From NCBI GenBank assembly GCA_051530055.1, contig CM121343.1, forward strand, positions 1,520,389 through 1,584,388: DNA of 64,000 bases. The letters are read 5' to 3'. The stretch's first letter is position 1; every line of letters starts with the position of its first letter. The stretch comes from Neoechinorhynchus agilis. Its lineage: Eukaryota; Animalia; Acanthocephala. The translations under genes were made by a program, and so were the position numbers. Under the pieces are notes generated by a model. It made no database searches, was not told the origin of the DNA, and saw only the letters and a list, made by a program, of their open reading frames with translations. Below, piece by piece: positions 10,880 through 48,425 of this stretch.

Positions 10880-12830
10880 ACTGACAAGCACAGATGGCCA
10901 TCGCACACATGTACAAAATTCACATCTGGTATCGAACCATTTATCTGCCAGCAGCGAACGTGCGCGTCCGATCATCACAGGATTGGGCGAGACGTAACCA
11001 CTTAGTTGTCGTGCTGTTTTCGATGCTAACTGGGGTGAGTTTAAGAAGGGGATAAGGAGCAAAAAATGGGAATGCGATTTGCAAGAAGCACAGATGGTCA
11101 TCGCACACATGTACAAAATTCACATCTGGTATCGAACCATTTCTCTGCCAGCAGCAAAAATGCTCGTCCGATCATCACAGGATTAGGCGCGATGTCGCCA
11201 CTTAGTTGTCGTGCTGTTTTCGATGCTAACTGGGGTGAGTTTAAGAAGGGGATAAGGAGCAAAAAATGGGAATGCGATTTGCAAGAAGCACAGATGGTCA
11301 TCGCACACATGTACAAAATTCACATCTGGTACCGAACCATTTATCTGCCAGCAGCGAACGTGCGCGTCCGATCATCACAGGGTTGGGCGAGACGTAACCA
11401 CTTTGTTGTCGTGGTATTTTAATGGCTAAATGTCGTGAGTCTGAGAAGCGGATAAAGAGCAAAAAATGGGAATGCGATTTGCAAGAAGCACAGATGGTCA
11501 TCGCACACATGTACAAAATTATCATCTGGTATCGAACCACTTCTCTGCCAGCAGCAAAAATGCTCGTCCGATCATCACAGGATTATGCGCGACGTCGCCA
11601 CTTAGTTGTCGTGCTATTTTCGTGGCTAATTTTGGTGAGCTTGAGAATCCGATACAGAGCAAAAAATGGGAATGCGATTTGAAAGAAGCACAGCTGGCCT
11701 TCGCACACATGCACAAAATTCACATCTGGTATCGAATGGTTTCTCTGCCAGCAGCGAACTTGCCAGTCCGATCATCACAGGATTGGGCGCGACGTCACCA
11801 CTTAGTTGCCGTTTTGTTTTCCTGACTAATTGTCGTGAGTTTAAGAAGCGGATAAAGAGGAAAAATGGGAATGCGATTTGAAAGCAGCACAGATGGCTAT
11901 CGCACACATGCACAAAATTCACATCTGATATCCAACCATTTCTCTGAGAGTAGCAAACGTGCTCGTCCGATCATCACAGGGTTGGGCGCGACGTCACCTC
12001 TTAGTTGTCGTGCTGTTTTCGATGCTAACTGGGGTGAGTTTAAGAAGGGGATAAGAAGCAAAAAATGAGAACACGATTTGAAAGATGCACCGATGGCCAT
12101 CGAACACATGTACAAAATTCACATCTGGTATCGAACCATTTCTCTCTGAGCAGCAAACATGCTCGTCCGATCATCACATTATTGCGCGGGGCGTCGCCAC
12201 TTTCTTGTCGTGCTATTTTCAGGGCTAACTTTGGTGAGCTTGACAAGGGGACAAAGATCCAAAAATTGGAACGCGATTTGAAAGAAGCACAGATGGTCAT
12301 CGCACACATGTACAAAATTCAAATCATGTATCGAACCATTTCTCTGCCAGCAGAAAAAATGCTAGTCCGATCTTCACAGGATAGGGCGCGACGTCACCAC
12401 CGGGTTGTCGTTCTGTTTTCGTGGCTAATTGTGGTGAGTTTGAGAAGCGGATAAAGGGCAAAAAATTGGAATGCGATTTGAAAGAAGCACAGATGGCCAT
12501 CGAACACATGTACAAAATTCACATCTGGTATCGAACCACTTCTCTGCCAGCAGCGAACGTGCTCGCCCAATCACCACAGGATTGGGCGCGATGTCACCAC
12601 GTTGTTGTCGTGCTGTTTTCCTGGTTAACAGTCACGAGTTTAATTAGGGGATAATGGGCAAAAAATGGGAACGCGATTTGAAAGAAGCCATTTCTCTGCC
12701 AGGAGCGAACGTGCGCGTCCGATCATCACAGGAATGGGCGCGACGTCACCACTTAGTTGTCGTTCTATTTTCCTGGCTAACTGTGGTGAGTCTGCGAAGC
12801 GGATAAAGAGCAAAAAATGGGAAGGGGGTG
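10880..12830. repeat. Tandem array of about 10 units of 200 bp
   Basis: The anchor GCAC(A/C)G recurs at 10888, 11088, 11288, 11488, 11688, 11887, 12087, 12287 and 12487. The last unit, starting near 12687, is internally deleted. Confidence 0.95.
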
Positions 12831-13628: not shown

Positions 13629-13922
13629 TCAGCCGAGTCCATTGATGAATTTAAGTGTTCGTGGGCTCGGTTTGAATTCGTCATAGATCCGCCGGTCGTG
13701 TCGATGCTCTGTGAATGGCCAGACATTCTGTTGAGTTGGGATGATGTCACCATCGTTCACCTTGCTGTCCGCGATGATTCGGAAGGAATATAGAGGGAAT
13801 CCATGGAATTGTGCCCGAGGACCATTCGCGATTGCCGGAATGATAAGAGCTTCAGGTACGAAACGAGCTTCTAACACAGTGGCGAGCATTACCAACGAGA
13901 GAAATCTTGACACTGCGTTCAT
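13629..13922 (-). CDS. 97-aa secreted protein, candidate amidated-peptide precursor
   Basis: Signal-peptide-like start MNAVSRFLSLVMLATVLEA, a dibasic RR site and C-terminal KFINGLG-stop. An upstream TACTTCAG acceptor near 13951 suggests a spliced 5' UTR. Confidence 0.55.
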   Translation of the reverse strand: MNAVSRFLSLVMLATVLEARFVPEALIIPAIANGPRAQFHGFPLYSFRIIADSKVNDGDIIPTQQNVWPFTEHRHDRRIYDEFKPSPRTLKFINGLG

Positions 13923-14352
13923 TGTGTTCGATTTGATTCCGATGGATCCCTGAAGTATGAAGGAGAACGGAGAAATTACGAGCAAAGGTAATTTAAAATT
14001 TTACAGAACCACAATGGACGTGTCGAAACTCATTCTATCGGTGTTAAAATGAATTCCCCGGGGAAGGGATGCAGCGCAAAATCTGCAAAGTCAGCTTATT
14101 GAAAGTTCCTACGATCTGGTATTTATTGAGCTTTTGAGCGTGCATAATTCCTATTGTTATTTTTAAAAGGTCTCAAGTATCGGCTTTGGAACTAAGTTCT
14201 TCAAAGGCAATTCTCTTTTAAGTTCCGGAACTTTTAGCTATTTTCTTTCAAAGAAGAATATGCAGGGGTTATCGTTTATGCGCCTAAAATGGTTCATTGT
14301 AACATTAGTGGATTTTATTATGCGCGCCACTTTTAACGATAACAAATGTAAA

Positions 14353-17300
14353 TCATTTCTCGGCTCGATTTTGGAACATAAATATTTGTTCAGCTATATT
14401 GACTTTTCGACGTTCAAAGTAATCAGCGATTAATCTTCCATGAGTTGATTCTTTTATAATTTGATTGAACGTATCATATCGGACGACATGTTCACTATCG
14501 CACTTATCGCCGCCACCACCACCACCACCACCACCTTCGAAAGCTTCCCGGTAATCAATTTCGAGATGTAATTCTATTTTTACCTAATGTGTATTTCAAA
14601 CACATTGCTAATGAATCGCACAAACTGTCTTCATTTTCGATTCCCACAAAAAGATCGTATAGTGAATTGAACACATTGACCAGTGTGCAATGATCCGCAG
14701 GAGGCAATGAGTTAACATGAACGTTCTGAGACTGGCCGATGGATAAGTATAGAAAATTCCGGCATAAATCTAACTTATCGTTGTCTTAAAACAAGTTTTA
14801 TTACCCTACAGAGAAAAATTACTCTTTACCTGTTTGGTGTAGCGAATAAAATAGCGATAATTTTAGATCCAAATTACCATTCTGGACGATATCGAGCAAT
14901 CGGATGAAATCAACGAAAGCAACTCCTCTTTTATTTTCATCGCGTACAACCAATTTGTAGAAGCGTAACGCTAATTGGTCATTGCGAACTCCTGTATTCC
15001 ATGCAAACAGTGACGGATAAATTATTAGAAACTCGGTTGCAGGTAATCGAAAACTAGCATGTGATATCCCTTTCGTGCCGTCGTCTTCCGATAGAGTCAA
15101 TATTTTCCGGCAGCTATTCTATGATATAAGAACTAATTTTAATTTATCCAATAATTCTCAGGAAAAGGCATTAATAGGATAAAACGATTATGGAAGAGTC
15201 AACATTATAACCTGACGTAAAAATTAAAAGGAATTATTGGTTTTAATATTTCGGCACAATCTTGTACGCGTTTATCAAGGTTGCTCGTAAGTTTTTAAAT
15301 ACGTGAGTTGAGCAACCTTGATGAACGCGTACAAGATTACGGTACAGAAATATTGGAACCAATAAGTCCTTTTAATTTTTATGCCATAAACAAGCATCAA
15401 CAATTCAATCTTCAAACATTATACCCTGAATTTTTTAAAGCTCTTTATAAAACGTAATTTAAATATTTCGAGCAACTGGAAACATGCAACTAATTAGAGA
15501 TAAATTGGCGACTACTATTGCATGAATGTACTTTTTTTGTGACGATGTTATCCATAGATTGTTTCGGTTTCAATAATTAACAATTCTTAAGAAGTTCCAC
15601 GTAGAGAACGAAATATTAATAAAATTAAATTACTTCTCTTTACTTCGCCTTGACCAAAACATCATCGAAATTAAATTCATTGTTTAGATCTAAGCACGTT
15701 TCGAACCAACGAGGGAACCCCTGGCTTTTATAACTGATGATGAACCCGACGAGGTTCAAAACGTATTAAAAATTTATCTGTCAAATTTTATAATTACGGG
15801 AAATGCCAACGAAATGGTGATTTTAGCACCTACTTTAAATAAAAGAAACAATTCCTTGATTTCGGGACCTGTAAATGCACATATCCACATTTCAAGGTTG
15901 ATTGCTTTTACGGCTTCTTCGGCCAAAGTATCTCCAAGGCATTTTACAACCTGCATTCTGTGCCGCAATCGAGCTGATCGGATATAATCGTTAGTTATGC
16001 TTTGTCCATATGTAGAGTAAGAAAGTCTCAATAGAGAAGTGATATCCTTTATATCCCTGAATTTACTGTTCTTATTTGTGTTTGAAAATTGTTATGATTT
16101 TTGAATTCTAGGTCCAACTTACCGAAAACGGAGTGTGTATTGTTTGAAGATACTGGGATAAGACAGAAAACGAGAGCGATGAATCCGGCAGGTTTAACAA
16201 TCGCTCCTGGTTAAGGGCCAATATTGTCAATGCAAGTTGGAAAAGGACCTATGGTGCTTGTAGAAGATCACTTTTTGATAAAGAAAGAGCAAAGAAACCT
16301 TTACACCGTCAAGTAAGAACATGTCCATGACATAGACTGCTGCTTTGAACGGTATTGTACTGATTTTGGGTTGAAATTTGTCGATAGATAAATACTTACT
16401 TCAAAAATATGGTCAAAAACCAAGAAACCGTTACGCAGCTGATAAGCCCTATATCGCTAAATCTATCAAATAAATCAGGTAAATGCTCTTTAATCAGATC
16501 TTCGAAAACTCCTAATTTGCAGAAATTATCGATCATCGTTGGCTTTAATTCGACATACCTTGATCCACGATTGCTCCCACCACCTTCAAGTCGTAATATT
16601 GAGGAAGTAAATGTTGACTAATTATATTCATCAACCAAAAGCACTCCTCCTCGTTGCAGAACAAAAGAAGAACCGAAACAACAATGTTCATTGCTTGGCA
16701 ATATCCTATGGGGAAATAGAATTCGAAATCACTTCAAAACTGGCTCGGTATTTTTCTTCCCAAAAACACAAAAATCAGTAACGCCAATCGTTTTTAATCT
16801 ATACAACAATGTTCATTGGTCGGCAATATCCTACGGGGAAATAGAATTCGAAATCGCTTCTAAGCTGGTTCGGTATTTTTTCTTCTCAAAAACACAAAAA
16901 TCAGTGACGCGTATCGTTTTGGACCGATACAACAATGTTCATTCATTGACAATATCCTACGGGGAAATTGAATTCGAAATCGCTTCTAAACTGGTTCGGT
17001 ATTTTTTGTTCGTCTCAAAAACACAAAAATCAGTAACGCGTATCGTTTTGGACCCATACAACAATGTTCATTCATTGGCAATATCCTACGGGGAAATTGA
17101 ATTCGAAATCGCTTCTAAATTGGCTCGGTATTTTTCTTCTCAAAAACACAAAAATCAGTAACGCGTATCCTTTTTTGGACCGATACAACAATGTTCATTC
17201 ATTGGCAATATCCTACGGGGAAATTGAATTCGAAATCGCTTCTAAACTGGTTCGGTATTTTTTGTTCGTCTCAAAAACACAAAAATCAGTAACGCGTATC

Positions 17301-20300
17301 GTTTTGGACCGATACAACAATGTTCAATCATTGCCAATATCCTACGGGGAAATTGAATTCGAAATCGCTTCTAAACTGGTTCGGTATTTTTTTCTTCTCA
17401 AAAACACAAAAATCAGTAACATGAATCGTTTTGGACCGATACAACAATGTTCATTCATTGGCAATATCCTACGGGGAAATTGAATTCGAAATCCCTTCTA
17501 AATTGGCTCGGTATTTTTCTTCTCAAAAACACAAAAATCAGTAACGCGTATCCTTTTTGGACCGATACAACAATGTTCATTCATTGGCAATATCCTACGG
17601 GGAAATTGAATTCGAAATCGCTTCTAAACTGATTCGGTATTTTTTCTTCTCAAAAACACAAAAATCAGTAACGCGTATCGTTTTGGACCGATACAACAAT
17701 GTTCATTCATTGGCAATATCCTACGGGGAAATTGAATTCGAAATCGCTTCTAAGCTGGTTCGGTATTTTTTCTTCTCAAAAACACAAAAATCAGTAACGC
17801 GTATCGTTTTGGACCGATACAACAATGTTCATTCATTGGCAATATCCTACGGGGAAATTGAATTCGAAATCGCTTCTAAACTGGTTCGGTATTTTTTCTT
17901 CTCAAAAACACAAAAATCAAAAACGGAAGTTTTGGACCGATACAACAATGTTCATTCATTGGCAATATCCTACGGGGAAATTGAATTCGAAATCGCTTCT
18001 AAACTGGTTCGGTATTTTTTCTTCTCAAAAACACAAAAATCAGTAACGCGTATCGTTTTGGACCGATACAACAATGTTCATTCATTGGCAATATCCTACG
18101 GGGAAATTGAATTCGAAATCGCTTCTAAACTGGTTCGGTATTTTTTCTTCTCAAAAACACAAAAATCAGTAACGCGTATCGTTTTGACCGATACAACAAT
18201 GTTCATTCATTGGCAAATCTGGGAAGAATTCGTGCTTCTAATGTTCGGTATTTTTTAAAAAAATAGCGTATCTTTTATCCTACGGGGAAATGAATTGAAA
18301 TCTTCTAATGGTTTTTTTCTTCAAAACAAAAATGTACGGTATCGTTTTGGACCGATACAACAATGTTCATTCATTGGCAATATCCTACGGGGAAATTGAA
18401 TTCGAAATCGCTTCTAAACTGGTTCGGTATTTTTTTCTTCTCAAAAACACAAAAATCAGTAACGCGTATCGTTTTGTACCGATACAACAATGTTCATTCA
18501 TTGGCAATATCCTACGGGGAAATTGAATTCGAAATCGCTTCTAAACTGGTTCGGTATTTTTTCTTCTCAAAAACACAAAAATCAGTAACATGAATCGTTT
18601 TGGACCGATACAATGTTCATTGGAATATCCTGGGAAATTGAATTCGAAATCCCTTCTAAATTGGCTCGGTATTTTTCTTCTCAAAAACACAAAAATCAGT
18701 AACGCGTATCCTTTTTTGGACCGATACAACAATGTTCATTCATTGGCAATATCCTACGGGGAAATTGAATTCGAAATCGCTTCTAAACTGATTCGGTATT
18801 TTTTCTTCTCAAAAACACAAAAATCAGTAACGCCAATCGTTTTTAATCCATACAACAATGTTCATTGGTCGGCAATATCCTATGGGGAAATAGAATTCGA
18901 AAACGCCTGAAAACTGGTTCGGTATTTTTTCTTCCCAAAAACACAAAAATCAGTAACATGAATAGTTTTGGACCGATACAACAATGTTCATTCATTGGCA
19001 ATATCCTACGGGGAAATTGAATTCGAAATCGCTTCTAAACTGGTTCGGTATTTTTCTCAAAAACACAAAAATCAGTAACGCCTATCGTTTTTAATCCATA
19101 CAACAATGTTCATTGGTCGGCAATATCCTATGGGGAAATAGAATTCGAAAACGCCTGAAAACTGGTTCGGTATTTTTTCTTCCCAAAAACACAAAAATCA
19201 GTAACACGAATAGTTTTGGACCGATACAACAATGTTCATTCATTGACAATATCCTACGGGGAAATTGTATACGAAATCCCTTCTAAACTGGCTCGGTATT
19301 TTTTGTTCATCTCAAAAACACAAAAAATTAGTAACGCGTATCATTTTCAACCGATACAACAATCTTCATTGATCGGCAATATCCTACGGGGAAATTGAAT
19401 ACGAAATCCCTTCTAAATTGGCTCGGTATTTTTCTTCTCAAAAACACACAAAATCAGTAACGCGTATCGTTTTGGACCGATACAACAATGTTCATTCATT
19501 GGCAATATCCTACGGGGAAATAGAATTCGAAATCGCTTCTAAACAGACTCGGTATTTTTTCTCACAAACACGAAAAATCACGGTTCGACTTTCCTACGAC
19601 TATGAAACAGCTTTAGAATCAAAAGACTGAAAAAGTGTACCTAGAATCTGAGAAATAACGGATAATTTGAAGACTAACAATTTAACGCTTGTACTTAAGG
19701 GAAACTCACCAATACTCGGATCGTGTTTGGCATAACACTGCAGAACTCTTCGTAGTGCATCAATGCCATCTTTATTTTGGAAAGCATTGTGCTCAGGTAA
19801 CGAGCGGTGAAGATCTCGTTCAATCTCCTCAAGAATATCTTCAGACAAGTTGTCCAATGAATCATTAATCAATTTGTGGTATAAACCAGGATGCATCAAG
19901 CGGTAATGATTGGCGCCGGATAACTGCATCCATATCCTGGCTCTATGGGACTGCGGTAAACCCGCAAAAAACAATTCACGGAGTGCATTCACGCGGTAAT
20001 ATTGATCCTTCCTGTAATCAAAGGTTACATTTTTCAATCATTGTCGAACTTCATACCAGCAATATAGGTCCCAGTGATATAGCCAATTCGTCTCACGTTC
20101 GACTTCACTCGTTTTCATCTCAACGTTGTCCGAATTGGAGTACTCCAAGTATAAGGGTCCGGCAAGCTCTAAAAAATTTAATTGAAAAGTTGCTAATGTT
20201 TTAAAACTTGATTTTATCCACTTGCAAGTCTCCATCATGGCTTAACAGTTTGAACGTTATCGTATGCCGCTCCTTATTTGTATTATTATAAAAAGAACAC

Positions 20301-22030
20301 AACTACCAATGATATGAACTTTCTTTACCAGCTAAACATTTATTGGACAATCATTATTGTAACAAAGAAATCTAGCATCCGATAAGCAGACATGTCACAG
20401 TCGAAAAGGTACCGGTAAAATATATGAATAGACATTTATTTATAGTAGGTTTGGCACAATCTACTAACAAGAGCGGCTTTGTGGATCTTGAGAGTATAAA
20501 GAAGATGGATTTATTTAGTGCGCTCCTAAAAACATCCAATCAAAATTCTAACCGAAAAAATGTGATTGAAAGCCCCAATCGCCTTATAAGATGGCTTTTT
20601 CGTAAATTCTCAGTGTAAATCCAGAACCAAATAATTTCTTATTTTTATATAATTAAAAACTTATTTCAATGGTTCAAGCGACATTTTGTTGACATTGACC
20701 GAAAACGTTGTATGTGAGATTACAATATTAAGCGCTGTTGTATCAGCTCAGCGAAGTTCGTTCGTCTCGAGGATAACTATCATCATAGATCGAAATGCCT
20801 TAAATTGTCACAGAGAGAACGCCATTGGAAAATCGAAAAATATATCATAATGATGCTTTAAAATACATTCGGAGCCCTTTAAAAGTGCGATAATAGTCAG
20901 CTCAAGGATTCGGTTACCCAGGGCACAAAGGAGCGTGCCTAAAATAGATTCTTATTTTAAACGATTCCATTACTTACCACGAAGAGAACGTTTTTTCTCA
21001 GTAATCACCTTCTCATAATCATTATGGAGTCTACAAAAAACGTTTAAAAATTTGAAAACTAAGGCATCATACTTTAAACACTTCTTTTGGCAGAAACTAA
21101 TAAATCGCTCACAATCTTCGACGATTTCAAATGAGCGTTCGAGGTTAATAAATTCTAAAGATCCAATTGGATCCATGTTTACTTTCATTGAGTAATTTAG
21201 TCCCGATGAGGTTGCACGGTGAATGGATTTGAAGTGTCGAAATGAGAGAACGATTGCGAATAAATGTTTTGTCTAGAAAAAAATAAGAAAATGCATTTTC
21301 GGGTTTTTATTCTTACTTTCGATTGGAATATAAGAAAGTTATTGGTTACGATCAATCTTCCCAAGGATAGTTTCTTACTAAACGGCAAAATAACAGCACA
21401 GGTAGCAGCTTCATGTTCAATACATTCCGTAGACGGCAGTCGAAATTCTTCACTGTTAAAAATGAGTAATGTTCGAGTTAAATTACAAACCGTATGTAAT
21501 CTTGCTTAAGAATTTCTCCAATGTCATCATGCATGTACGCTGCCTCCGTTTTCACGGAATTCTCAGATCGATCATCCGATAGAAAGTGCTGGACCGATCT
21601 GTCGATCATTTTATGAAGAAATCCAAAAATTTCTTCGAAATTCAGAAGCATGGAGAATACATGAGTTGATCCTCTGTTTGTTTGTATTACAATTCTCTGT
21701 GATATTTGGTTGGTTGAGTGTTTCAAATCCTTTTAGCAGCAACAATTAAACTCTCAATTAAATCAAAAATACCGTTATGTCAAGATATTTAATTGCAATT
21801 TTAAAATCGCGACCCATGAAAAAAGCGTAAAAGCACAAGTGTTCGGTGCTGATATACATCCACCCTTGTCTGGGAATAACGTGATTCCAATGACAGCATG
21901 AACAATCTACAAATCATATTTAAAATGTTTGATATACTCCAAGGACCTTACATTTTAATAATTTGTCATCCTTTAAACCAAAGATATCCTTAAACTTTTT
22001 CTCAGCAGATTCGAATTGTGCATCACTTGT
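14353..22030 (-). CDS. TBC1D9: TBC1D8/TBC1D9-like Rab GTPase-activating protein (2 GRAM, TBC, EF-hand), multi-exon; 5' end uncertain
   Basis: Exons read [18 protein letters not shown] (GRAM1) and FRLPSTE...[23 protein letters not shown] (GRAM2). The TBC domain reads [30 protein letters not shown]...PSIG|[14 protein letters not shown]...VVGAIVDQ|GVFEDL...SWFLTIFL. Later exons read [10 protein letters not shown] and [10 protein letters not shown], with the stop at 14353-14355. Confidence 0.88.
15218..15381. mobile_element. Fold-back MITE-like element in a TBC1D9-like intron
   Basis: Arms of about 68 bp (15218-15286 / 15310-15381) form an imperfect inverted repeat, e.g. AATCTTGTACGCGTTTATCAAGGTTGCTC versus GAGCAACCTTGATGAACGCGTACAAGATT. 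Both ends are TA. Confidence 0.7.
15734..15764 (+). ncRNA. Isolated HH-A hammerhead core with a G12-to-A change
   Basis: CTGATGATGAACCCGACGAGGTTCAAAACGTA, lying antisense within a TBC1D9-like intron. Confidence 0.5.
16672..19560. repeat. 126-bp intronic satellite (about 23 units) derived from the TBC1D9-like acceptor/exon junction
   Basis: GACCGATAC recurs at 17560 and 17686 (126 bp apart). The array fills intron 19709-16706 and its terminal unit is the real exon start. Confidence 0.95.
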
Positions 22031-22276
22031 ATCTACATGGCTTAAGATTCACGAGAAAGCAGGCAACTCATAGTTTTAAAGTCCAACTAATTCTTTTTAA
22101 ATTAAACATTTCAGGGTTAATCATCGAGAAAAAATCCTCCGGGATGATGAAGTTGGCGATGTGGTGTTCATAGTAATTCGAATAAAACATGTATTTATCA
22201 GGATAGCAACACATACGGTCCTCAAACCTAGACAATGGTGACCATGAGTACCCGAACCATATAATATAAAATATCT

Positions 22277-22738
22277 AAAACCTTTTATGTCTTGGATTAT
22301 TATCTTCGGGGGAAAAGATATTTGCTTTTGGTAGTTTTGCCACTTCGGATTTAAATTCACTGATTAATTTCCCCGATACTTCACGTCGGATAATTCTGAC
22401 ATTATTCCAAGATTTGTCGTTTTTAGAATCTTTTAATAATTAACAATGACAAACCTTGAGAAAATGTCGGAATTATACGACGTGAAATATCGGAAATAAA
22501 TTAGACAATTTAAATCCGGGGTGTTATAATTACCAAAAGAAAGGATTAAGCTTTTAATATCTTGGATTATTATCTTCGGGGGAAAAGATATTTCCTTTTG
22601 GTAGTTTTGCCACTTCGGATTTAAATTCACTGATTAATTACCCGACGTGAAATATCGGAAATAAATTAGTGAATTTAAACCCGGGGTGTTATAATTACCA
22701 AAAGAAAGGATTAAGCTTTTAATATCTTGGATTATTAC
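22277..22738. repeat. Fold-back element 22346-22518 plus an internally deleted tandem copy 22616-22683 with duplicated flanks
   Basis: Inverted arms of about 55 bp (CGGATTTAAATT...TCACGTCG.ATAATTC.GACA). The flanking blocks TTGGATTATTATCTTCGGGGG and GGGGTGTTATAATTACCAAAAG each occur twice. Confidence 0.75.
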
Positions 22739-23399
22739 CTTGCCCAATGAAAATTATCAGCTGTTTAAGGGATCTTTACCTCAACACTGAACAAAAAAGT
22801 AACCGGCGGTCAGACTTAAGGTAAAAATAAATTAGTCAATTCAGATCTTGAATGTTATAATTACCAAAAAAAATAAAATCTTACAGATGACTGACGAGGC
22901 GAGACTTCTCGAATTATCTCAATAAAATACGTTCTATCCATTTCACTCTTCTTTAGGTGGGTAATATTTTTCGATAACTGACTTTTAAAAACATGTAAGA
23001 TTGAATTTTTACAGCACGAACCATTAACGGGATTCATAAGCGTCAACTTCCTATAATCGCCAAAAAGTTTAGACTAGTTAAATGTTTGCTCGCTTTTTAT
23101 TCTCAGATGACGAAATATAGCCCCTGTACAAGAAAGAATAATCCCCTTAACTTTGCACATTCAATATGAACTGTGACGTCACTCTTTTAGCTCAGAAAGC
23201 GAGCAAAGGTTTGTGAGTTCATTTTTGCCGTCTTCACAGGAAATCCCCCGTTTTTGCTTTATTTTAAATTCCACCGGCGAATATTGGCTTAAGAGCGAGA
23301 ATTTTGCCTAGTTAGGGTGATGTGGCGAAATCTCCAATCCTAAGTTCAATTCTTTTGTTACGCTATTAGCAATATTGATTGCCGCTTCGGAAAATGACG

Positions 23400-23900: not shown

Positions 23901-25120
23901 GGCGAATCCTGTCCCCGGTGTTATCGTTACTCATTTATTTGAGAAATATTTTGCAAGATTTTCCTTTCCTCTTCCGCCTTGATAACGATGCTCAATCTTA
24001 TCAAATCCATGAAATATTTTTTCGTTATTGCCGAATAAAAGGAGTAAATAGCCACCGGGATCGTCCGTAAGTTATATCTTTACGAACACAATTAATCAAC
24101 ACATCAAAACTTCGAAAGCTAGTCCTAAGTTAATCTTTTTATCCGCTCAGTGAATTATTTCACCCCAGAAAGTGGCTAGTTAAGATAATTCTTTGTTTTC
24201 GATTACTTTGAGCAATGCAAGTTGTTGATGGATCATTTGCGCAGATATCATGAAAAAAGAACGATGATGTTGAGGCATTGTTCATATTAATGCTTAGAAC
24301 GGAAATGTTTTATTTTCAAAAATACTGAACTTCAATCTTATCCGCCTCATTGTCGAATTTTCTAATCTAGAAGCTCTATTTGCTAAATTCATCATATTTC
24401 TTCTAACTTTATTGTTAACTAAGATGTGTGTAAACTTGGGAGTCGTTTGATCGTGATTAATTCCGCATTTATATTACTTTCGCCCTAGAACACTTAATTT
24501 TTAATGTCATATATCATTGTCCTCGGGGTGAATTTGATTGTGCGTTGGCGAAAGAACGCACACTTAATTTTTATTTATTAACATTTGGATCACTTACTGT
24601 ATTTCGCGGATATAAAGCTAGCGGCGAAAAATTAAATGACACTTTTATATCCTTGCAGGAGTACACTACTGAGCCGTGGGATTAACTTCGCGGACATTAT
24701 CAAGGCCAGAAGAGATTGTGCTACCCTTTGATAGCCAATAAAACGATCTTCATAAGGCTATATGTTTGAGCTCGACGTTCGCTTTCTTCAAACATTTTTA
24801 GTTGATTCTGAAATGCTGTAATCCCGGATAAACTCACCGAGCGGTCAACATGAAAAATGTGCTTAGTTTTAAACGAGGCAACTGAATATTCGATGGATTT
24901 ATATTTAGTTAAGTAGTAAAAAGCCACTGAATAATCTTCCACACTAGCCAGATCAATCGAGAGGTTAGAAACAGAACCTTCACCTTTAATTAATCTTCTG
25001 TGTTCAATCTGAGTATAGTTTCAACTCTATTAGGAAATACAATCAAGATATCCTACTTAAATTATGCGATCTTTGAATATATGTTTCTTTATTATTATGA
25101 GTTTTATATGGTTTCTAAAG

Positions 25121-25800
25121 AATGCTGCGCGGCTGAATGCTCTCCCTGTAGGTAAACTTGGAAATCTCCTTGCTGACTCAGTCGTCAGGATCGCAGTATC
25201 CTTGAGATTGGGCCTACCGATTTACATCCCGCATCGCTGCCGCTGCGGCACTATAGTGGACTCTTCGGGGAGACACGGTCTCATATGCAAGACGTCATCG
25301 GGACGATTTCCAAGGCATGCTGAAATCAATGCCATTCTGAGTAGGACCCTAAAAACACTTTACCTTCCAAACATTCTAGAACCCACTAATCTTTGTAGAT
25401 TAGATGGAAGACGCCCTGATGGCGTGACCGTATTTCCTTGGCGGGAGGGAAAATGTTTGTTGTGGGATGCAACGAGTGTGGACACGTTGGCAAACTCCAA
25501 CATCAGCCACTCGAAAAAAGGTCCAGGAGGAGCGGCGACGGCTGCAGAGGGCCGGAAATGCTCAAAATACAGGGAGCTAATCCGAAATTACCATTTTGTC
25601 CCCTTCGGTGTGGAAACGTATGGGGCCTTGGGAGGGTCGGCATTGGCCCTGCTGAAAGACTTGGGGAAACGAATCAACGCTGCGACTGAAGAGCCAAGAT
25701 CGACGTCGTTCTTGGCGCAAAAAATAAGCATTGCGGTGCAGCGGGGCAATGCGGCTAGCATTTTGGCCAGCGCCGATGAATGGGAGCGTTGATGAAACTA
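25121..25800 (+). mobile_element. 5'-truncated CRE-like non-LTR retrotransposon with open C-terminal ORF (CCHC knuckle + restriction-like endonuclease)
   Basis: HRCRCG...HGLIC zinc motif, RHAEIN, RPDG...WDAT...AEGRK..KY (PD-D-K nuclease), FVPFGVETYG and ISIAVQRGNAASIL; stop at 25790-25792. Confidence 0.85.
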
Positions 25801-30159: not shown

Positions 30160-33100
30160 TAAGGACAGGATGCCTTATGACTTTTTTAAAGTCAAAAACG
30201 AAGCTCAACGCCTTCACGACATGGAAACAAAACTTGAAACATAGAATCGTCTTGAGAAAGTCTCTTGTAAGGATTTATACGATCTTGCAGCGAAAAAAGG
30301 AAGGTGTGCGATGGCACAAGCTAAAATTATGCTACTCTAACCGAATTTTGCTTTTTAAACAACTTTCCCCGCATGTAAAGAACACATCACATTGGGTTTT
30401 CGGTTTTCCGAAAGCTCTCGTATCCGAACGATGTCCGTTCCTGATTAATTCGCGGATAAATGACTCGTTCCACTGTAAATACGTTCCGTTTTCTTATTTA
30501 TAATCTGTGGTGGCTTTTAAGTCAAAAAGGAATCTTAACGTCTTCAAGGCATAGAAACAAAACTTGAAACATTGAATCGTCTTGAGAAAGTCTCTTGTAA
30601 GGATTGTAAGGAAGATCTTGCAGCGAAAAAAGTAAGGTGTGCAATGGCACAAAGAAAGGTGATTATTTTCAATAATAAAGCTAAAATTATGCTACTCTAA
30701 CCGAATTTTGCTTTTTAAACAACTTTCCCCGCATGTAAAGAACACATCACATTGGGTTTTCGGTTTTCCGAAAGCTCTCGTATCCGAACGATGTCCGTTC
30801 CTGATTAATTCGCGGATAAATGACTCGTTCCACTGTAAATACGTTTCTTTTTCTTATAATCTGTGGTGGCTTTTAAGTCAAAAAGGAATCTTAACGTCTT
30901 CAAGGCATAGAAACAAAACTTGAAACATTGAATCGTCTTGAGAAAGTCTCTTGTAAGGATTGTAAGGAAGATCTTGCAGCGAAAAAAGTAAGGTGTGCAA
31001 TGGCACAAAGAAAGGTGATTATTTTCAATAATAAAGCTAAAATTATGCTACTCTAACCGAATTTTGCTTTTTAAACAACTTTCCCCGCATGTAAAGAACA
31101 CATCACATTGGGTTTTCGGTTTTCCGAAAGCTCTCGTATCCGAACGATGTCCGTTCCTGATTAATTCGCGGATAAATGACTCGTTCCACTGTAAATACGT
31201 TTCTTTTTCTTATAATCTGTGGTGGCTTTTAAGTCAAAAAGGAATCTTAACGTCTTCAAGGCATAGAAACAAAACTTGAAACATTGAATCGTCTTGAGAA
31301 AGTCTCTTGTAAGGATTTAAGGATCTTGCAGCGAAAAAAGTAAGGTGTGCAATGGCACAAAGAAAGGTGATTATTTTCAATAATAAAGCTAAAATTATGC
31401 TACTCTAACCGAATTTTGCTTTTTAAACAACTTTCCCCGCATGTAAAGAACACATCACATTGGGTTTTCGGTTTTCCGAAAGCTCTCGTATCCGAACGAT
31501 GTCCGTTCCTGATTAATTCGCGGATAAATGACTCGTTCCACTGTAAATACGTTCCGTTTTCTTATTTATAATCTGTGATGGCTTTTAAGTCAAAAAGGAA
31601 TCTTAACGTCTTCAAGGCATAGAAACAAAACTTGAAACATTGAATCGTCTTGAGAAAGTCTCTTGTAAGGATTTTAGATCTTGCAGCGAAAAAGAAGGTG
31701 GCATGGCACAAGCTAAAATTATGCACTCTAACCGAATTTTGCTTTTAAAACTTTCCCGATGTAAAGAACACATCACATTGGGTTTTCGGTTTTCGAAAGC
31801 TCTCGTATCCGAACGATGTCGTTCCTGATTAATTCGCGGATAAATGACTCGTTCCCTGTAAATACGTTTTTTCTTATAATCTGTGTGCTTTTAGTCGGAA
31901 TCTTAACGTCTTCAAGGAAGAAACAAAACTTGAAACATTGAATCGTCTTGAGAAAGTCCTTGTAAGGATTTTAAGATCTTGCAGCGAAAAAAGTAAGGTG
32001 TGCAATGGCACAAAGAAAGGTGATTATTTTCAATAATAAAGCTAAAATTATGCTACTCTAACCGAATTTTGCTTTTTAAACAACTTTCCCCGCACACATC
32101 ACATTGGGTTTTCGGTTTTCCGAAAGCTCTCGTATCCGAACGATGTCCGTTCCTGATTAATTCGCGGATAAATGACTCGTTCCACTGTAAATACGTTCCG
32201 TTTCTTATAATCTGTGTGGCTTTTAGCAAAAAGGAATCTTAACGTCTTCAAGGCATAGAAACAAAACTTGAAAATTGAATCGTCTTGAGAAAGTCTCTTG
32301 TAAGGATTTGTAAGGAAGATCTTGCAGCGAAAAAAGTAAGGTGTGCAATGGCACAAAGAAAGGTGATTATTTTCAATAATAAAGCTAAAATTATGCTACT
32401 CTAACCGAATTTTGCTTTTTAAACAACTTTCCCCGCATGTAAAGAACACATCACATTGGGTTTTCGGTTTTCCGAAAGCTCTCGTATCCGAACGATGTCC
32501 GTTCCTGATTAATTCGCGGATAAATGACTCGTTCCACTGTAAATACGTTCCGTTTTCTTATAATCTGTGGTGGCTTTTAAGTCAAAAAGGAATCTTAACG
32601 TCTTCAAGGCATAGAAACAAAACTTGAAACATTGAATCGTCTTGAGAAAGTCTCTTGTAAGGATTTGTAAGGAAGATCTTGCAGCGAAAAAAGTAAGGTG
32701 CGCAATGGCACAAAGAAAGGTGATTATTTTCAATAATAAAGCTAAAATTATGCTACTCTAACCGAATTTTGCTTTTTAAACAACTTTCCCCGCATGTAAA
32801 GAACACATCACATTGGGTTTTCGGTTTTCCGAAAGCTCTCGTATCCGAACGATGTCCGTTCCTGATTAATTCGCGGATAAATGACTCGTTCCACTGTAAA
32901 TACGTTCCGTTTTCTTATTTATAATCTGTGGTGGCTTTTAAGTCAAAAAGGAATCTTAACGTCTTCAAGGCATAGAAACAAAACTTGAAACATTGAATCG
33001 TCTTGAGAAAGTCTCTTCTAAGGATTTGTAAGGAAGATCTTGCAGCGAAAAAAGTAAGGTGTGCAATGGCACAAAGAAAGGTGATTATTTTCAATAATAA

Positions 33101-33253
33101 AGCTAAAATTATGCTACTCTAACCGAATTTTGCTTCTTAAACAACTTTCCCCGCATGTAAAGAACACATCACATTGGGTTTTCGGTTTTCCGAAAGCTCT
33201 CGTATCCGAACGATGTCCGTTCGTAATTAATTCGCGGATAAATGACTCGTTCT
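30160..33253 (+). repeat. Tandem array of about 356-bp units (about 9 units)
   Basis: GTCAAAAAGGAATC recurs at 30521, 30877, 31233 and 31589. Units differ by a 26-nt segment flanked by AAG. Confidence 0.95.
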
Positions 33254-42229: not shown

Positions 42230-45200
42230 CAAAGATTTTGTCCATAGATTGTTTTTGATCAGGTGAAAAAAAGAAAATCGATTTAATTTGATTAATATTT
42301 CGTCCTCTACTTGGAACTTCTTCAAAATTGTTAGAGTAATGAGAAACAATAAAGAAAGTAATTTTAAAAATGAAATCCATAATTAATAGATTTTTTTTCC
42401 ATGCACGGCCGAATTGACACACAGTCCACCGACCGGCTGAGCCACATAAAAATTCTAATAAATATCCATAGATTGTTTTTATATGGGCGAAATAAAGAAA
42501 ATTGATTTAATTTGATTAATCTCTCGTCCTCTACGTGGAACTTTTTCACAATTCCTAAAGTACTGAGAAACAAAAATGAAAGCTCTTTTAAGGATGTTAT
42601 CCATAGATTGTTTTTATTTGGGCGAAATAAAGAAAATTGATTTAATTTGATAAATATTCCGTCTACTACGTGGATCGTTTTCAGAATTCTTAAAGTACTG
42701 AGAACAATAATGAAAGCTCTTTTAAAGATGTTATCCATGGATTGTTTTTATTTTGGCGAAATAACGAAAATTGATTTAATTTGATTAATATTCCGTCTTC
42801 TACGTGTAAGTTCATTAGAATTGTTAAAGTAATGAGAAAAGAAAACGAAAGCTCTTTTAAAGATGTTGTCCATAGATTGTTTTTATTTGGGCGAAATAAA
42901 GAAAATTGATTTAATTTGATTAATCTCTCGTCCTCTACGTGGAACTTTTTCAGAATTCTTAAAGTAATGAGAAACAAAAATGAAAGCTTTTTTAAAGATG
43001 TTGTCCATAGATTGTTTTTATTTGGGCGAAATAAAGAAAATTGATTTAATTTGATTAATCTCTCGTCCTCTACGTGGAACTTTTTCAGAATTCTTAAAGT
43101 ACTGAGAAACAAAAATGAAAGCTCTTTTAAAGATGTTATCCATAGATTGTTTTTATTTGGGCGAAATAAAGAAAATTGATTTAATTTGATTAATCTCTCG
43201 TCCTCTACGTGGAACTTTTTCAGAATTCTTAAAGTAATGAGAAACAATAATGAAAGCTCTTTTAAAGATGTTATCCATAGATTGTTTTTATTTGGGCGAA
43301 ATAAAGAAAATTGATTTAATTTGATTAATATTACGTCTTCTACGTGGATCTTTTTCAGAATTCTTAAAGTACTGAGAAACAAAAATGAAAGCTCTTTTAA
43401 AGATGTTATCCATAGATTGTTTTTATTTGGGCGAAATAAAGAAAATTGATTTAATTTGATTAATATTCCGTCTTCTACGTGGATCTTTTTCAGAATTCTT
43501 AAAGTACTGAGAAACAAAAATGAAAGCTCTTTTAAAGATGTTATCCATAGATTGTTTTTATTTGGGCGAAATAGAGAAAATTGATTTAATTTGATTAATA
43601 TTCTGTCCTCTACGTGGAACTTTTTCAGAATTCTTAAAGTAATGAGAAACAATAATGAAAGCTCTTTTAAAGATGTTATCCATAGATTGTTTTTATTTGG
43701 GCGAAATAAAGAAAATTGATTTAATTTGATTAATATTCGTCTTCTACGTGGATTTTTTTTGTTTTTGAATAAGAAAATGATTTAATTTGATTAATTTCGT
43801 CCTCTACGTGGAACTTTTAGAATTCTTAAAGTAATGAGAAAAAAAATGAAGTTTTTAAAGATGTTATCCATAGATTGTTTTTATTTGGGCGAAATAAAGA
43901 AAATTGATTTAATTTGATTAATCTCTCGTCCTCTACGTGGAACTTTTCAGAATTCTTAAAGTAATGAGAAACAAAAATGAAAGCTCTTTTAAAGATGTTA
44001 TCCATAGATTGTTTTTATTTGGGCGAAATAAAGAAAATTGATTTAATTTGATTAATATTCCGTCTTCTACGTGGAACTTTTTCAGAATTCTTAAAGTACT
44101 GAGAAACAAAAATGAAAGCTCTTTTAAAGATGTTATCCATAGATTGTTTTTATTTGGGGATAGAAAATTTATTTGAGTCTAACTTTTCAGAATTTTAAAT
44201 ATGAGAACAAAATGAAGTTTAAAGATGTTATCCATAGATTGTTTTTTTTGGGCGAAATAAAGAAAATTGATTTAATTTGATTAATATTCCGTCTTCTACG
44301 TGGATCTTTTTCAGAATTCTTAAAGTACTGAGAAACAAAAATGAAAGCTCTTTTAAAGATGTTATCCATAGATTGTTTTTATTTTGGCGAAATAACGAAA
44401 ATTGATTTTATTTGATTAATATTCCGTCTTCTACGTGGATCTTTTTCAGAATTCTTAAAGTACTGAGAAACAAAAATGAAAGCTCTTTTAAAGATGTTAT
44501 CCATAGATTGTTTTTATTTGGGCGAAATAAAGAAAATTGATTTAATTTGATTAATATTCCGTCTTCTACGTGGACCTTTTTCAGAATTCTTAAAGTAATG
44601 AGAAACAAAAATGAAAGCTCTTTTAAAGATGTTATCCATAGATTGTTTTTATTTGGGCGAAATAGAGAAAATTGATTTAATTTGATTAATATTCTGTCCT
44701 CTACGTGGAACTTTTTCAGAATTCTTAAAGTACTGAGAAACAAAAATTAAAGCTCTTTTAAAGATGTTATCCATAGATTGTTTTTATTTGGGCGAAATAA
44801 AGAAAATTGATTTAATTTGATTAATCTCTCGTCCTCTACGTGGATCTTTTTCAGAATTCTTAAAGTAATGAGAAACAATAATGAAAGCTCTTTTAAAGAT
44901 GTTATCCATAGATTGTTTTTATTTGGGCGAAATAAAGAAAATTGATTTAATTTGATTAATCTCTCGTCCTCTACGTGGAACTTTTTCAGAATTCTTAAGT
45001 ACTGAGAAACAAAATTAAAGCTCTTTTAAAGATGTTATCCATAGATTGTTTTTATTTGGGCGAAATAAAAAAAATTGATTTAATTTGATTAATATTCCGT
45101 CTTCTACGTGGACCTTTTAATTTTAAAGTGAGAAAAAATAAGTCTTTTAAGATGTTTCCTGATTGTTTTTTTGGCGAAATAAGAAAATTGATTTAATTTG

Positions 45201-48200
45201 ATTAATATCTGTCTCTACGTGGAACTTTTTCAGAATTCTTAAAGTAATGAGAAACAAAAATGAAAGCTCTTTTAAAGATGTTATCCATAGATTGTTTTTA
45301 TTTGGGCGAAATAGAGAAAATTGATTTAATTTGATTAATATTCTGTCTTCTACGTGGAACTTTTTCAGAATTCTTAAAGTACTGAGAAACAAAAATTAAA
45401 GCTCTTTTAAAGATGTTATCCATAGATTGTTTTTATTTGGGCGAAAAAAAGAAAATTGATTTAATTTGATTAATCTCTCGTCCTCTACGTGGATCTTTTT
45501 CAGAATTCTTAAAGTAATGAGAAACAATAATGAAAGCTCTTTTAAAGATGTTATCCATAGATTGTTTTTGTTTGGGCGAAATAAAGAAAATTGATTTAAT
45601 TTGATTAATATTACGTCTTCTACGTGGATCTTTTTCAGAATTCTTAAAGTACTGAGAAACAAAAATGAAAGCTCTTTTAAAGATGTTATCCATAGATTGT
45701 TTTTATTTTGGCGAAATAAAGAAAATTGATTTAATTTGATTAATCTCTCGTCCTCTACGTGGATCTTTTTCGAATTCTTAAAGTAATGAGAAACAAAATG
45801 AAAGCTCTTTTAAAGATGTTATCCATAGATTGTTTTTATTTTGGCGAAATAACGAAAATTGATTTTATTTGATTAATATTACGTCTTCTACGTGGATCTT
45901 TTTCAGAATTCTTAAAGTACTGAGAAACAAAAATGAAAGCTCTTTTAAAGATGTTATCCATAGATTGTTTTTATTTGGGCGAAATAAAGAAAATTGATTT
46001 AATTTGATTAATATTCCGTCTTCTACGTGGACCTTTTTCAGAATTCTTAAAGTAATGAGAAACAATAATGAAAGCTCTTTTAAAGATGTTATCCATAGAT
46101 TGTTTTTATTTGGGCGAAATAAAGAAAATTGATTTAATTTGATTAATATTCTGTCTTCTACGTGGAACTTTTTCAGAATTCTTAAAGTACTGAGAAACAA
46201 AAATTAAAGCTCTTTTAAAGATGTTATCCATAGATTGTTTTTATTTGGGCGAAATAAAGAAAATTGATTTAATTTGATTAATATTCCGTCTTCTACGTGG
46301 ATCTTTTTCAGAATTCTTAAAGTAATGAGAAACAAAAATGAAAGCTCTTTTAAAGATGTTATCCATAGATTGTTTTTATTTGGGCGAAATAAAGAAAATT
46401 GATTTAATTTGATTAATATTCTGTCTTCTACGTGGAACTTTTTCAGAATTCTTAAAGTACTGAGAAACAAAAATGAAAGCTCTTTTAAAGATGTTATCCA
46501 TAGATTGTTTTTATTTGGGCGAAAAAAAAAGAAAATTGATTTAATTTGATTAATCTCTCGTCCTCTACGTGGATCTTTTTCAGAATTCTTAAAGTAATGA
46601 GAAACAAAAATGAAAGCTCTTTTAAAGATGTTATCCATAGATTGTTTTTATTTGGGCGAAATAAAGAAAATTGATTTAATTTGATTAATATCTCGTCCTC
46701 TACGTGGAACTTTTTCAGAATTCTTAAAGTACTGAGAAACAAAAATTAAAGCTCTTTTAAAGATGTTATCCATAGATTGTTTTTATTTGGGCGAAATAAA
46801 GAAAATTGATTTAATTTGATTAATATTCCGTCTTCTACGTGGACCTTTTTCAGAATTCTTAAAGTAATGAGAAACAATAATGAAAGCTCTTTTAAAGATG
46901 TTATCCATAGATTGTTTTTATTTGGGCGAAATAAAGAAAATTGATTTAATTTGATTAATATTCTGTCTTCTACGTGGAACTTTTTCAGAATTCTTAAAGT
47001 ACTGAGAAACAAAAATTAAAGCTCTTTTAAAGATGTTATCCATAGATTGTTTTTATTTGGGCGAAATAAAGAAAATTGATTTAATTTGATTAATATTCCG
47101 TCTTCTACGTGGATCTTTTTCAGAATTCTTAAAGTAATGAGAAACAAAAATGAAAGCTCTTTTAAAGATGTTATCCATAGATTGTTTTTATTTGGGCGAA
47201 ATAGAGAAAATTGATTTAATTTGATTAATATTCTGTCTTCTACGTGGAACTTTTTCAGAATTCTTAAAGTACTGAGAAACAAAAATTAAAGCTCTTTTAA
47301 AGATGTTATCCATAGATTGTTTTTATTTGGGCGAAAAAAAGAAAATTGATTTAATTTGATTAATCTCTCGTCCTCTACGTGGATCTTTTTCAGAATTCTT
47401 AAAGTAATGAGAAACAATAATGAAAGCTCTTTTAAAGATGTTATCCATAGATTGTTTTTATTTGGGCGAAATAAAGAAAATTGATTTAATTTGATTAATA
47501 TTCCGTCTTCTACGTGGATCTTTTTCAGAATTCTTAAAGTAATGAGAAACAAAAATGAAAGCTCTTTTAAAGATGTTATCCATAGATTGTTTTTATTTGG
47601 GCGAAATAAAGAAAATTGATTTAATTTGATTAATATTCCGTCTTCTACGTGGAACTTTTTCAGAATTCTTAAAGTACTGAGAAACAAAAATGAAAGCTCT
47701 TTTAAAGATGTTATCCATAGATTGTTTTTATTTGGGCGAAATAAAGAAAATTGATTTAATTTGATTAATCTCTCGTCCTCTACGTGGATCTTTTTCAGAA
47801 TTCTTAAAGTAATGAGAAACAAAAATGAAAGCTCTTTTAAAGATGTTATCCATAGATTGTTTTTATTTGGGCGAAATAAAGAAAATTGATTTAATTTGAT
47901 TAATATTACGTCTTCTACGTGGATCTTTTTCAGAATTCTTAAAGTACTGAGAAACAAAAATGAAAGCTCTTTTAAAGATGTTATCCATAGATTGTTTTTA
48001 TTTGGGCGAAATAAAGAAAATTGATTTAATTTGATTAATATTCCGTCTTCTACGTGGACCTTTTTCAGAATTCTTAAAGTAATGAGAAACAAAAATGAAA
48101 GCTCTTTTAAAGATGTTATCCATAGATTGTTTTTATTTGGGCGAAATAGAGAAAATTGATTTAATTTGATTAATATTCTGTCCTCTACGTGGAACTTTTT

Positions 48201-48425
48201 CAGAATTCTTAAAGTACTGAGAAACAAAAATGAAAGCTCTTTTAAAGATGTTATCCATAGATTGTTTTTATTTGGGCGAAATAGAGAAAATTGATTTAAT
48301 TTGATTAATATTCCGTCTTCTACGTGGACCTTTTTCAAAATTCTTAAAGTACTGAGAAACAAAAATTAAAGCTCTTTTAAAGATGTTACCCATAGATTGT
48401 TTTTATTTGGGTGAAATAAAGAAAT
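42230..48425. repeat. 135-bp AT-rich satellite (about 45 units) with local 270-bp higher-order periodicity
   Basis: The unit ATCCATAGATTGTTTTTATTTGGGCGAAATAAAGAAAATTGATTTAATTTGATTAAT... repeats throughout. A unique-sequence interruption lies at about 42350-42470. Confidence 0.95.

What the first reader, a model, noticed from the sequence alone, without database searches (positions are those of the whole stretch)
16672..19709. Satellite made from a splice acceptor: about 22 stop-containing decoy 3' splice sites precede the real TBC1D9-like exon
Seen in the sequence: the real junction on the minus strand is tctatttccccatag|GA TAT TGC CAA GCA ATG AAC ATT GTT GTT TCG ([11 protein letters not shown]), with the acceptor at 16707-16706. 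The 126-bp units repeat this as ttcaatttccccgtag|GA TAT TGC CAA TGA ATG AAC ATT GTT GTA TCG. The phase-1 acceptor is kept, but Ala becomes TGA; variant units stop a few codons later (TAG or TAC TGA). The first decoy (19510) is only 200 nt from the GTGAGT donor (19709), while the true acceptor is 3 kb away, in a genome whose usual introns are 35-52 nt. Inference: the gene must skip all decoys, possibly because only the last one has a downstream donor for exon definition, or through stepwise splicing. Otherwise the array acts as a copy-number-tunable poison/NMD switch that cuts the TBC domain before its catalytic Gln finger. I know of no described satellite of this kind, but I cannot search.
Basis: partly seen in the sequence, partly recalled or inferred. 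Interest (0 to 1): 0.8.

Follow-up and report, generated by a model that had tools for sequence, protein, structure and literature searches.

The report
Splice-acceptor minisatellite inside a RabGAP intron
One intron of a conserved trafficking gene in the thorny-headed worm Neoechinorhynchus agilis has grown from 200 to 3,004 bases by head-to-tail copying of its own end plus the first 35 bases of the next exon, leaving 23 look-alike splice acceptors ahead of the real one; this kind of repeat ('mirage' minisatellite) is already described in amphioxus, and nothing here shows a regulatory role.

Summary
A 126-bp tandem array (window 16672-19580, minus strand) fills one intron of a GRAM-TBC RabGAP gene (TBC1D8/9-like) of Neoechinorhynchus agilis. 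Each unit holds about 91 nt of intron end, the acceptor and 35 nt of exon start. There are 23 in-register decoy AGs (21 with an intact core) before the true acceptor at 16707-16706. Every decoy reading checked meets an in-frame stop.

Pfam profile positions and homologues confirm the junction. The spliced model gives an intact 878-aa ORF. Twelve of its 16 introns are 38-52 nt.

The decoy acceptors score as well as the true one. The array has almost no donor-like sites, so only the true acceptor is followed by a donor. This fits exon definition but does not prove it.

The claim that no such satellite is described is wrong. 'Mirage' minisatellites in amphioxus Adh3 and globin genes, and the human F7 IVS7 VNTR, are direct precedents. 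The scan's own notes list similar arrays in three other genes of this genome. About 23% of this window is tandem array.

I found no RNA evidence for this gene. The poison/NMD-switch idea is untested. The public annotation splits the gene at this intron.

The parts
19710..20011 (-). Upstream exon of the GRAM-TBC RabGAP gene (TBC profile positions 1-88; contains the Arg-finger motif IERDLHR). It ends with the G that begins the Gly codon split by the intron.
19704..19709 (-). Donor GTGAGT of the expanded intron
   Evidence: PWM 4.1 bits, at the low end of the real donors
19581..19703 (-). Unique 5' part of the intron. Together with the intronic part of the first unit it forms the inferred ancestral 200-nt intron (19709-19510).
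16672..19580 (-). 126-bp tandem array: 23 decoy units plus the real terminal unit. Each unit holds about 91 nt of intron 3' end, the acceptor and 35 nt of exon start. In-register decoy AGs end at 19510, 19384, 19254, 19128, 19006, 18880, 18754, 18630, 18512, 18385, 18280, 18219, 18096, 17970, 17847, 17721, 17595, 17469, 17342, 17213, 17086, 16957 and 16831.
16706..16707 (-). True acceptor AG (phase 1)
16559..16705 (-). Real 147-nt exon ([11 protein letters not shown]...; Gln-finger YxQ motif; TBC profile from position 89). Its first 34 nt are the 3' end of the array.
16512..16558 (-). Next intron, 47 nt, donor GTATGT. This is the only good donor downstream of any of the 24 acceptors.
18216..18340 (-). 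Deletion-riddled units inside the array (also 18621-18640). They look like unpolished long-read consensus, so the exact copy number and sequence are uncertain here.
   Evidence: assembly method
14353..23037 (-). Whole gene as modelled here: 17 exons, 878 aa, no internal stop. The first 652 aa align to TBC1D8/9 homologues in one BLASTP segment across the junction.

Best explanation
This is a 'mirage'-type minisatellite. A 126-bp segment spanning the 3' end of an ancestral 200-nt intron, its acceptor and the first 35 nt of the next exon was duplicated in tandem. It was then amplified by unequal exchange or replication slippage to about 24 units. Only the last unit is continuous with the rest of the exon, so only it stays under coding constraint. 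The other units are intronic passengers that drift and homogenise among themselves. The gene (a GRAM-GRAM-TBC RabGAP of the TBC1D8/9 type) stays functional because enough transcripts are spliced from donor 19709 to the last acceptor. The most likely reason is that the last acceptor is the only one followed, 147 nt on, by a usable donor (exon definition across a 3-kb intron). Any use of a decoy would give a stop-containing RNA, as a by-product and not as a designed switch. Shown: the anatomy, the junction, the intact ORF, the equal strength of the acceptors, the lack of donors and the abundance of arrays. Inferred: the duplication mechanism, the skipping of decoys and exon definition as its cause.
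For: Array and units. Junction: the Pfam RabGAP-TBC profile ends at position 86 at residue 108 of 109 in the upstream exon and resumes at 89 at residue 1 of the downstream exon. Homologues run ...IGYCQAMN... without a gap, and a single BLASTP segment covers model residues 2-596 or 6-652. Intact 878-aa ORF. Three lineages (real unit, type A, type B) differ by 9.7-12.8%. This gives about 3.9% on the real lineage. Neutral substitution at 3.9% leaves this ORF stop-free in only 0.45% of simulations, which indicates continued purifying selection since the array arose. Where the real copy differs from the decoys in the exon part, it keeps the family-conserved Ala or differs only at synonymous third positions; the decoys carry stop, Pro, Ser, Arg or Trp changes. 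Homogeneous centre and diverged edges are typical of unequal crossing-over. Decoy acceptors score 7.0-7.8 bits against 7.0 for the true one, and no array GT reaches the median real donor. Five large arrays cover about 14.5 of 64 kb. The gene's other long introns also hold repeats. Precedents: amphioxus mirage repeats that leave splicing normal by RT-PCR (PMC3087553) and the human F7 IVS7 VNTR (PMC1557585).
Against: I have no RNA evidence that the 19709-16706 junction is used. Three protein searches and the representative search found no transcript-derived N. agilis protein for this gene. The RNA-guided public annotation did not bridge the intron: ACOME3_008862 reads 36 aa into it and stops. 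The age estimate rests on about 3.5 substitutions; at 1% divergence a dead gene would stay stop-free 27% of the time. The splice-site PWMs come from only 15 introns of one gene. Worms with 40-50-nt introns are expected to favour intron definition, which would favour the first decoy.
Confidence: 0.7

Rival explanations
1. The array is a selected, copy-number-tunable poison/NMD switch. A set fraction of transcripts is spliced to decoys, gains a premature stop and is degraded, which sets RabGAP dosage.
For: All 21 core decoys carry in-frame stops. Decoy acceptors are as strong as the true one. The 30 nt before the decoy AGs vary least among units, 3.0% against 6.3-7.5% further upstream.
Against: The stops follow from reading into intron sequence; no selection is needed. 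The TGA is one event amplified with type A. Decoys lack donors, so they are not cassette exons. The lower variability near the acceptor is not tested against the relatedness of units. The same kind of array is noted in unrelated genes of this genome, and arrays cover 23% of the window, which points to a mutational habit. There are no RNA data.
Confidence: 0.07
2. The array-bearing allele is broken. Splicing goes to the first decoy (the ancestral 200-nt geometry), or the intron is retained. The gene is inactive or split in this haplotype, as a rare deleterious variant in the pooled sample or an early pseudogene.
For: The public annotation ends gene 1 inside the intron and starts gene 2 at ATG 16691. 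No spliced transcript was found. The DNA came from a pool of about 50 worms. A scan note reports another array in this genome that marks a rare variant or misassembly (unchecked).
Against: All 17 exons are open and conserved, although the units have diverged about 10%. Repeats were masked before BRAKER, which by itself can explain the split model. The truncated model stops at position 88 of 216 in the TBC profile, so it is not a plausible product.
Confidence: 0.12
3. It is an assembly artefact: the array is inflated or misplaced by the hybrid long-read assembly.
For: Deletion-rich patches at 18216-18340 and 18621-18640 look like raw Nanopore error. The assembly is a MaSuRCA hybrid of Illumina and R9.4 reads.
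Against: The units show shared, structured variants: types A and B, an A-B dimer period at the 5' end and a homogeneous centre. The 2.9-kb array is shorter than the 5-kb minimum read length kept for assembly. Both flanks join the correct exons of one gene.
Confidence: 0.06
4. The intron is removed stepwise (recursive splicing), using each decoy in turn.
For: There are many evenly spaced strong acceptors.
Against: Recursive sites need AG followed by GT to rebuild a donor. Here the donor-side exon ends in ...ATTG and every decoy AG is followed by GATATT or ATTTGC, so no donor is rebuilt. There are no donor-like sites for recursive exons.
Confidence: 0.02

Closest known systems
'Mirage' minisatellites of amphioxus (Adh3: Canestro et al. 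2002, Nucleic Acids Res 30:2871, cited in PMC3087553 but not held in the library; globin genes BflGb6 and BflGb9: PMC3087553)
   Same: These are tandem minisatellite-like duplications whose unit spans an intron-exon boundary. In BflGb6 the unit is the 3' end of an intron plus the 5' part of the next exon, 150-160 bp. The authentic copy sits at the edge. Units are 81-100% identical, show concerted evolution, and the cluster edges are left out of homogenisation. Many units keep the AG signal.
   Different: The globin examples have 3-6 units; this array has about 24. The animal is an acanthocephalan with a compact genome of 40-50-nt introns. In amphioxus, normal splicing and length polymorphism were shown by RT-PCR and haplotypes; neither could be tested here.
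Human F7 intron 7 37-bp VNTR (PMC1557585)
   Same: It is a minisatellite whose terminal element spans an exon-intron boundary, so the authentic splice site is accompanied by identical pseudo-sites that stay silent. It serves as a natural model of splice-site choice.
   Different: It is on the donor side, with pseudo-sites downstream of the real one. The authors explain selection by 5'-to-3' scanning that takes the first site. Here it is the last of the acceptors that must be taken, which that rule does not explain.
Poison exons and NMD-coupled alternative splicing
   Same: Using a decoy would introduce a premature stop upstream of later junctions.
   Different: The decoys have no donor of their own. 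No regulated use and no cross-species conservation is shown.
Other arrays in the same genome noted by this scan (alpha-mannosidase with 21 acceptor copies; HEATR5 with 4; PRP4K with 14 first-exon copies)
   Same: Same genome and same architecture: tandem copies of a splice junction with one functional terminal copy (unchecked notes).
   Different: Different genes and different unit lengths (236 bp and 280-340 bp are noted). I did not examine them myself.

Membership tests
Mirage minisatellite (tandem duplication of an exon-intron boundary) | Head-to-tail array with a minisatellite-size unit | tested here: met
   126-bp period, about 23 copies, 84-93% match
Mirage minisatellite (tandem duplication of an exon-intron boundary) | Each unit contains the intron end, the splice signal and the adjacent exon fragment | tested here: met
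   About 91 nt of intron, the TAG acceptor and 35 nt of exon in each unit
Mirage minisatellite (tandem duplication of an exon-intron boundary) | The authentic junction is the terminal copy, continuous with the rest of the exon | tested here: met
   Pfam profile continuity 86 to 89; homologue alignment across the junction
Mirage minisatellite (tandem duplication of an exon-intron boundary) | Concerted evolution with less-homogenised edges | tested here: met
   Central type-A block at 93% match, 5' end at 84% with an A-B dimer period, last decoy type B
Mirage minisatellite (tandem duplication of an exon-intron boundary) | Regular splicing to the authentic site is not disturbed | tested here: inconclusive
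   No transcript-derived protein was found. There is only indirect support from the intact ORF.
Mirage minisatellite (tandem duplication of an exon-intron boundary) | Length polymorphism or instability between haplotypes | not testable with these tools
   Only one assembly is available; no reads
Poison exon / NMD switch | Premature in-frame stop when the site is used | tested here: met
   All 21 core decoys stop within 19 codons
Poison exon / NMD switch | A complete alternative exon with its own donor | tested here: not met
   No GT in the array reaches the median real donor score; 4 reach the minimum (small training set)
Poison exon / NMD switch | Regulated inclusion seen in RNA, and NMD sensitivity | not testable with these tools
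   No RNA reads could be reached
Recursive splice site | AG directly followed by a GT donor consensus | tested here: not met
   AG|GATATT in 21 decoy copies and the true site, AG|ATTTGC in one
TBC1D8/9-type RabGAP (host gene) | N-terminal GRAM domains plus a complete TBC domain with Arg (IxxDxxR) and Gln (YxQ) finger motifs | tested here: met
   GRAM, two stretches, E 5e-19. TBC profile 1-86, 89-128 and 140-176 on successive exons. IERDLHR and GYCQ are present. The best named hits are TBC1D9, 9B and 8.

The most novel reading that the evidence does not exclude
N. agilis may carry high-copy 'mirage' arrays genome-wide, and its spliceosome may tolerate them through a strict rule: take the acceptor nearest upstream of a donor, whatever the number of equally good acceptors transcribed earlier. 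That would make this worm a natural system for studying 3' splice-site choice. Alternatively, decoy use may leak in proportion to copy number, so the arrays would act as heritable expression dampers.
Probability: 0.1. Interest if true: 0.65.

Novelty: new member of a known kind. Interest (0 to 1): 0.4.

Why it matters
The array is a large natural cis-competition experiment. Twenty-three acceptors, as good as the real one by local sequence, are transcribed before it in an animal whose normal introns are 40-50 nt, yet the gene looks intact. With the published RNA-seq it could show how a short-intron spliceosome picks a 3' splice site across 3 kb. It would also show how much decoy use an essential gene tolerates. 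On the practical side, the array breaks the public gene model: one RabGAP is annotated as two proteins. Together with the other cases noted in this genome, it extends 'mirage' repeats from amphioxus to Syndermata.

Tried and rejected
(1) RNA evidence. I searched the protein collection with the upstream exon at two length ranges, with the downstream exon and without a length limit. The only N. agilis hit was the annotated genomic protein P0083, so junction use stays unknown.

(2) RNA structure that might mask the decoys. Single units and the real junction fold no better than shuffles (z -1.2, -0.15, -1.2). Rejected.

(3) Recursive splicing. No GT follows any decoy AG. Rejected.

(4) The unit as a dispersed element. 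The 34-nt probe matches only inside the array. Rejected for this window.

(5) A brute-force search for the annotated 537-aa downstream model gave spurious intron chains. I replaced it with a hand-guided, homology-checked model.

The per-unit folds cover the question only in part.

(7) The Canestro 2002 paper is not held in the library. Its content is cited only through PMC3087553.
Full report
**What is there**

On the minus strand, Tandem Repeats Finder reports a 126-bp array from 16672 to 19580. It has 12.2 copies at 93% match in the 3' part and 9.9 copies at 84% in the 5' part, with a 248-256-bp higher-order period. The core TTTCCCC[G/A]TAG|GATATTG occurs 22 times at about 126-nt spacing. 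A 34-nt probe across the acceptor matches 21 times, all inside the array, with none expected by chance.

Two further units (AG at 18631-18630 and 18220-18219) are riddled with small deletions but keep an AG. That makes 23 decoy AGs and one true acceptor (AG 16707-16706, exon from 16705).

Each unit holds about 91 nt of intron 3' end plus the first 35 nt of the exon. The array ends 34 nt inside the real exon. Removing the 2,804 nt between the first decoy and the true site leaves a 200-nt intron (19709-19510). The first decoy therefore sits where the original acceptor was.

**The junction and the gene**

- The upstream exon matches Pfam RabGAP-TBC up to profile position 86 at residue 108 of 109. 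The downstream exon starts at profile position 89 at its first residue.
- Full-length TBC1D8/9-type homologues read ...IGYCQAMN... without a gap.
- I mapped the annotated upstream protein onto the DNA and built the downstream exons by frame and homology.
- The model has 17 exons and 878 aa with no internal stop. A single BLASTP segment runs to homologues across the junction, for example model residues 6-652 against P0093.
- The Arg-finger motif IERDLHR and the Gln-finger motif GYCQ are both present, and two GRAM stretches lie at the N-terminus.
- Intron lengths are 989, 45, 43, 38, 44, 42, 809, 45, 3004, 47, 40, 50, 52, 715, 45 and 40 nt.
- The 715-nt and 989-nt introns owe their length to repeats. 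The 715-nt intron holds a fold-back element and a solo monomer of the window's 135-bp satellite. The 989-nt intron holds hairpin and tandem elements. No repeats were found in the 809-nt intron.

**Organism and annotation**

The top hit of the exhaustive search is 100% identical. It is named 'hypothetical protein ACOME3_008862 [Neoechinorhynchus agilis]' and comes from assembly GCA_051530055.1. This 460-aa model reads 36 residues into the intron and stops, at position 88 of 216 in the TBC profile.

A second gene call of 537 aa starts at the ATG at 16691, just inside the real exon. So the public annotation splits one gene at this intron. The genome paper states that repeats were masked with RepeatMasker before BRAKER, which can explain the split.

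**Decoys against the true site**

All 21 core decoys meet an in-frame stop:

- 16 copies have TGA in place of the Ala codon (GYCQ*).
- The deletion-damaged unit u18279 stops at codon 2.
- The other four stop 11-19 codons in.
- Of the two degenerate copies, the one at 18630 stops about 30 codons in by my reading. I did not translate the one at 18219.

The units form three lineages of about equal divergence:

| Pair | Differences |
|---|---|
| real vs type A | 12 of 124 sites |
| real vs type B | 14 of 125 sites |
| type A vs type B | 16 of 125 sites |

The TGA is a single event amplified with type A. Because every decoy runs into intron sequence with stops anyway, the stops need no selective explanation.

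I trained a position weight matrix on the gene's 15 other introns. It scores the decoy acceptors 7.0-7.8 bits and the true one 7.0 bits, against a median of 3.4 for real acceptors. Two type-B decoys (19128, 18880) are identical to the true site from -22 to +9.

By contrast, none of the 197 GTs in the interval reaches the median real donor score, and only 4 reach the weakest real donor. Only the true acceptor is followed, 147 nt on, by a good donor (GTATGT at 16558). Single units fold no better than shuffled sequence. No decoy AG is followed by GT, which rules out recursive splicing.

**Is the gene alive?**

Taking the three lineages as a star, the intronic part gives about 3.5 substitutions in 89 sites, about 3.9%, on the real lineage.

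| Neutral divergence | Simulated CDS copies still stop-free |
|---|---|
| 1% | 27% |
| 2% | 6% |
| 3.9% | 0.45% |

These figures come from one search, which simulated substitutions only. In the exon-derived part, the real copy keeps the conserved [12 protein letters not shown]. Where it differs from the decoys it differs only at two synonymous third positions and at the Ala codon. The decoys carry stop, Pro, Ser, Arg, Trp and Lys changes.

This points to continued purifying selection, and so to enough correct splicing. The estimate rests on few sites.

**RNA**

I could not reach any transcript for this gene. Skipping of the decoys is therefore inferred, not shown.

**Context**

Five large tandem arrays cover about 14.5 kb of this 64-kb window. 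Earlier notes of this scan, which I did not check, describe similar arrays in the same genome. They include 21 acceptor copies in an alpha-mannosidase intron, 4 in HEATR5 and 14 first-exon copies at PRP4K. One note describes an array that proved to be a rare variant or misassembly.

The assembly is a MaSuRCA hybrid of Illumina and R9.4 Nanopore reads from a pool of about 50 worms. This fits the deletion-rich patches at 18216-18340 and 18621-18640. Copy number should be treated as approximate and probably polymorphic.

**Comparison with what is known**

The kind is described.

- Ebner et al. [quoted passage not shown] In BflGb6 the unit is the 3' end of an intron plus the 5' part of exon 2, 150-160 bp, with 3-6 units. 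Haplotypes differ in length, the units evolve in concert, the edges are left out of homogenisation, and RT-PCR suggests regular splicing.
- That paper credits the term to Canestro et al. 2002 for Adh3. The 2002 paper is not held in the library.
- The human F7 intron 7 VNTR is the donor-side counterpart (PMC1557585).

The present array meets the structural criteria of a mirage repeat. It differs in copy number (about 24), phylum and genomic setting.

**Verdict**

It most likely reflects this genome's strong tendency to make tandem arrays, filtered by what splicing tolerates. The poison-switch reading is possible but unsupported.

Noticed in passing
window 13629-23037 (minus strand): The public annotation of GCA_051530055.1 splits this one RabGAP gene in two. 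ACOME3_008862 (460 aa) ends 36 residues into the array intron. A second 537-aa call starts at ATG 16691 and runs to 13629, past the stop at 14353-14355 that my model uses.
   Followed up: partly
window 10886-12823; 30318-33252; 42463-48439; 50030-51694: Four more large tandem arrays (units of 200, 356-361, 135 and 361 bp). The 50030-51694 unit is the reverse complement of the 30318-33252 unit. Together with the splice-acceptor array, about 23% of the window is tandem repeat.
   Followed up: no
window 15592-15619 and 15213-15386: The gene's 715-nt intron holds a solo monomer of the 135-bp satellite that forms the 6-kb array at 42463-48439. Next to it is a fold-back element with nested inverted repeats (arms of 45 nt at 84% and 29 nt at 97% complementarity).
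   Followed up: partly
window 22278-22873: The annotated 989-nt first intron is filled with hairpin-forming elements repeated at 165-270-bp spacing (51-53-nt arms, 76-83% complementary). The 16-nt first exon of the public model is not supported by homology.
   Followed up: no
window 18216-18340 and 18621-18640: Patches where units differ from the consensus almost only by many small deletions. This is the pattern of unpolished Nanopore consensus inside a repeat.
   Followed up: partly
window 25064-25792 (+): A 242-aa ORF with no Pfam match at E 0.01 or better. Its nature is unknown.
   Followed up: partly
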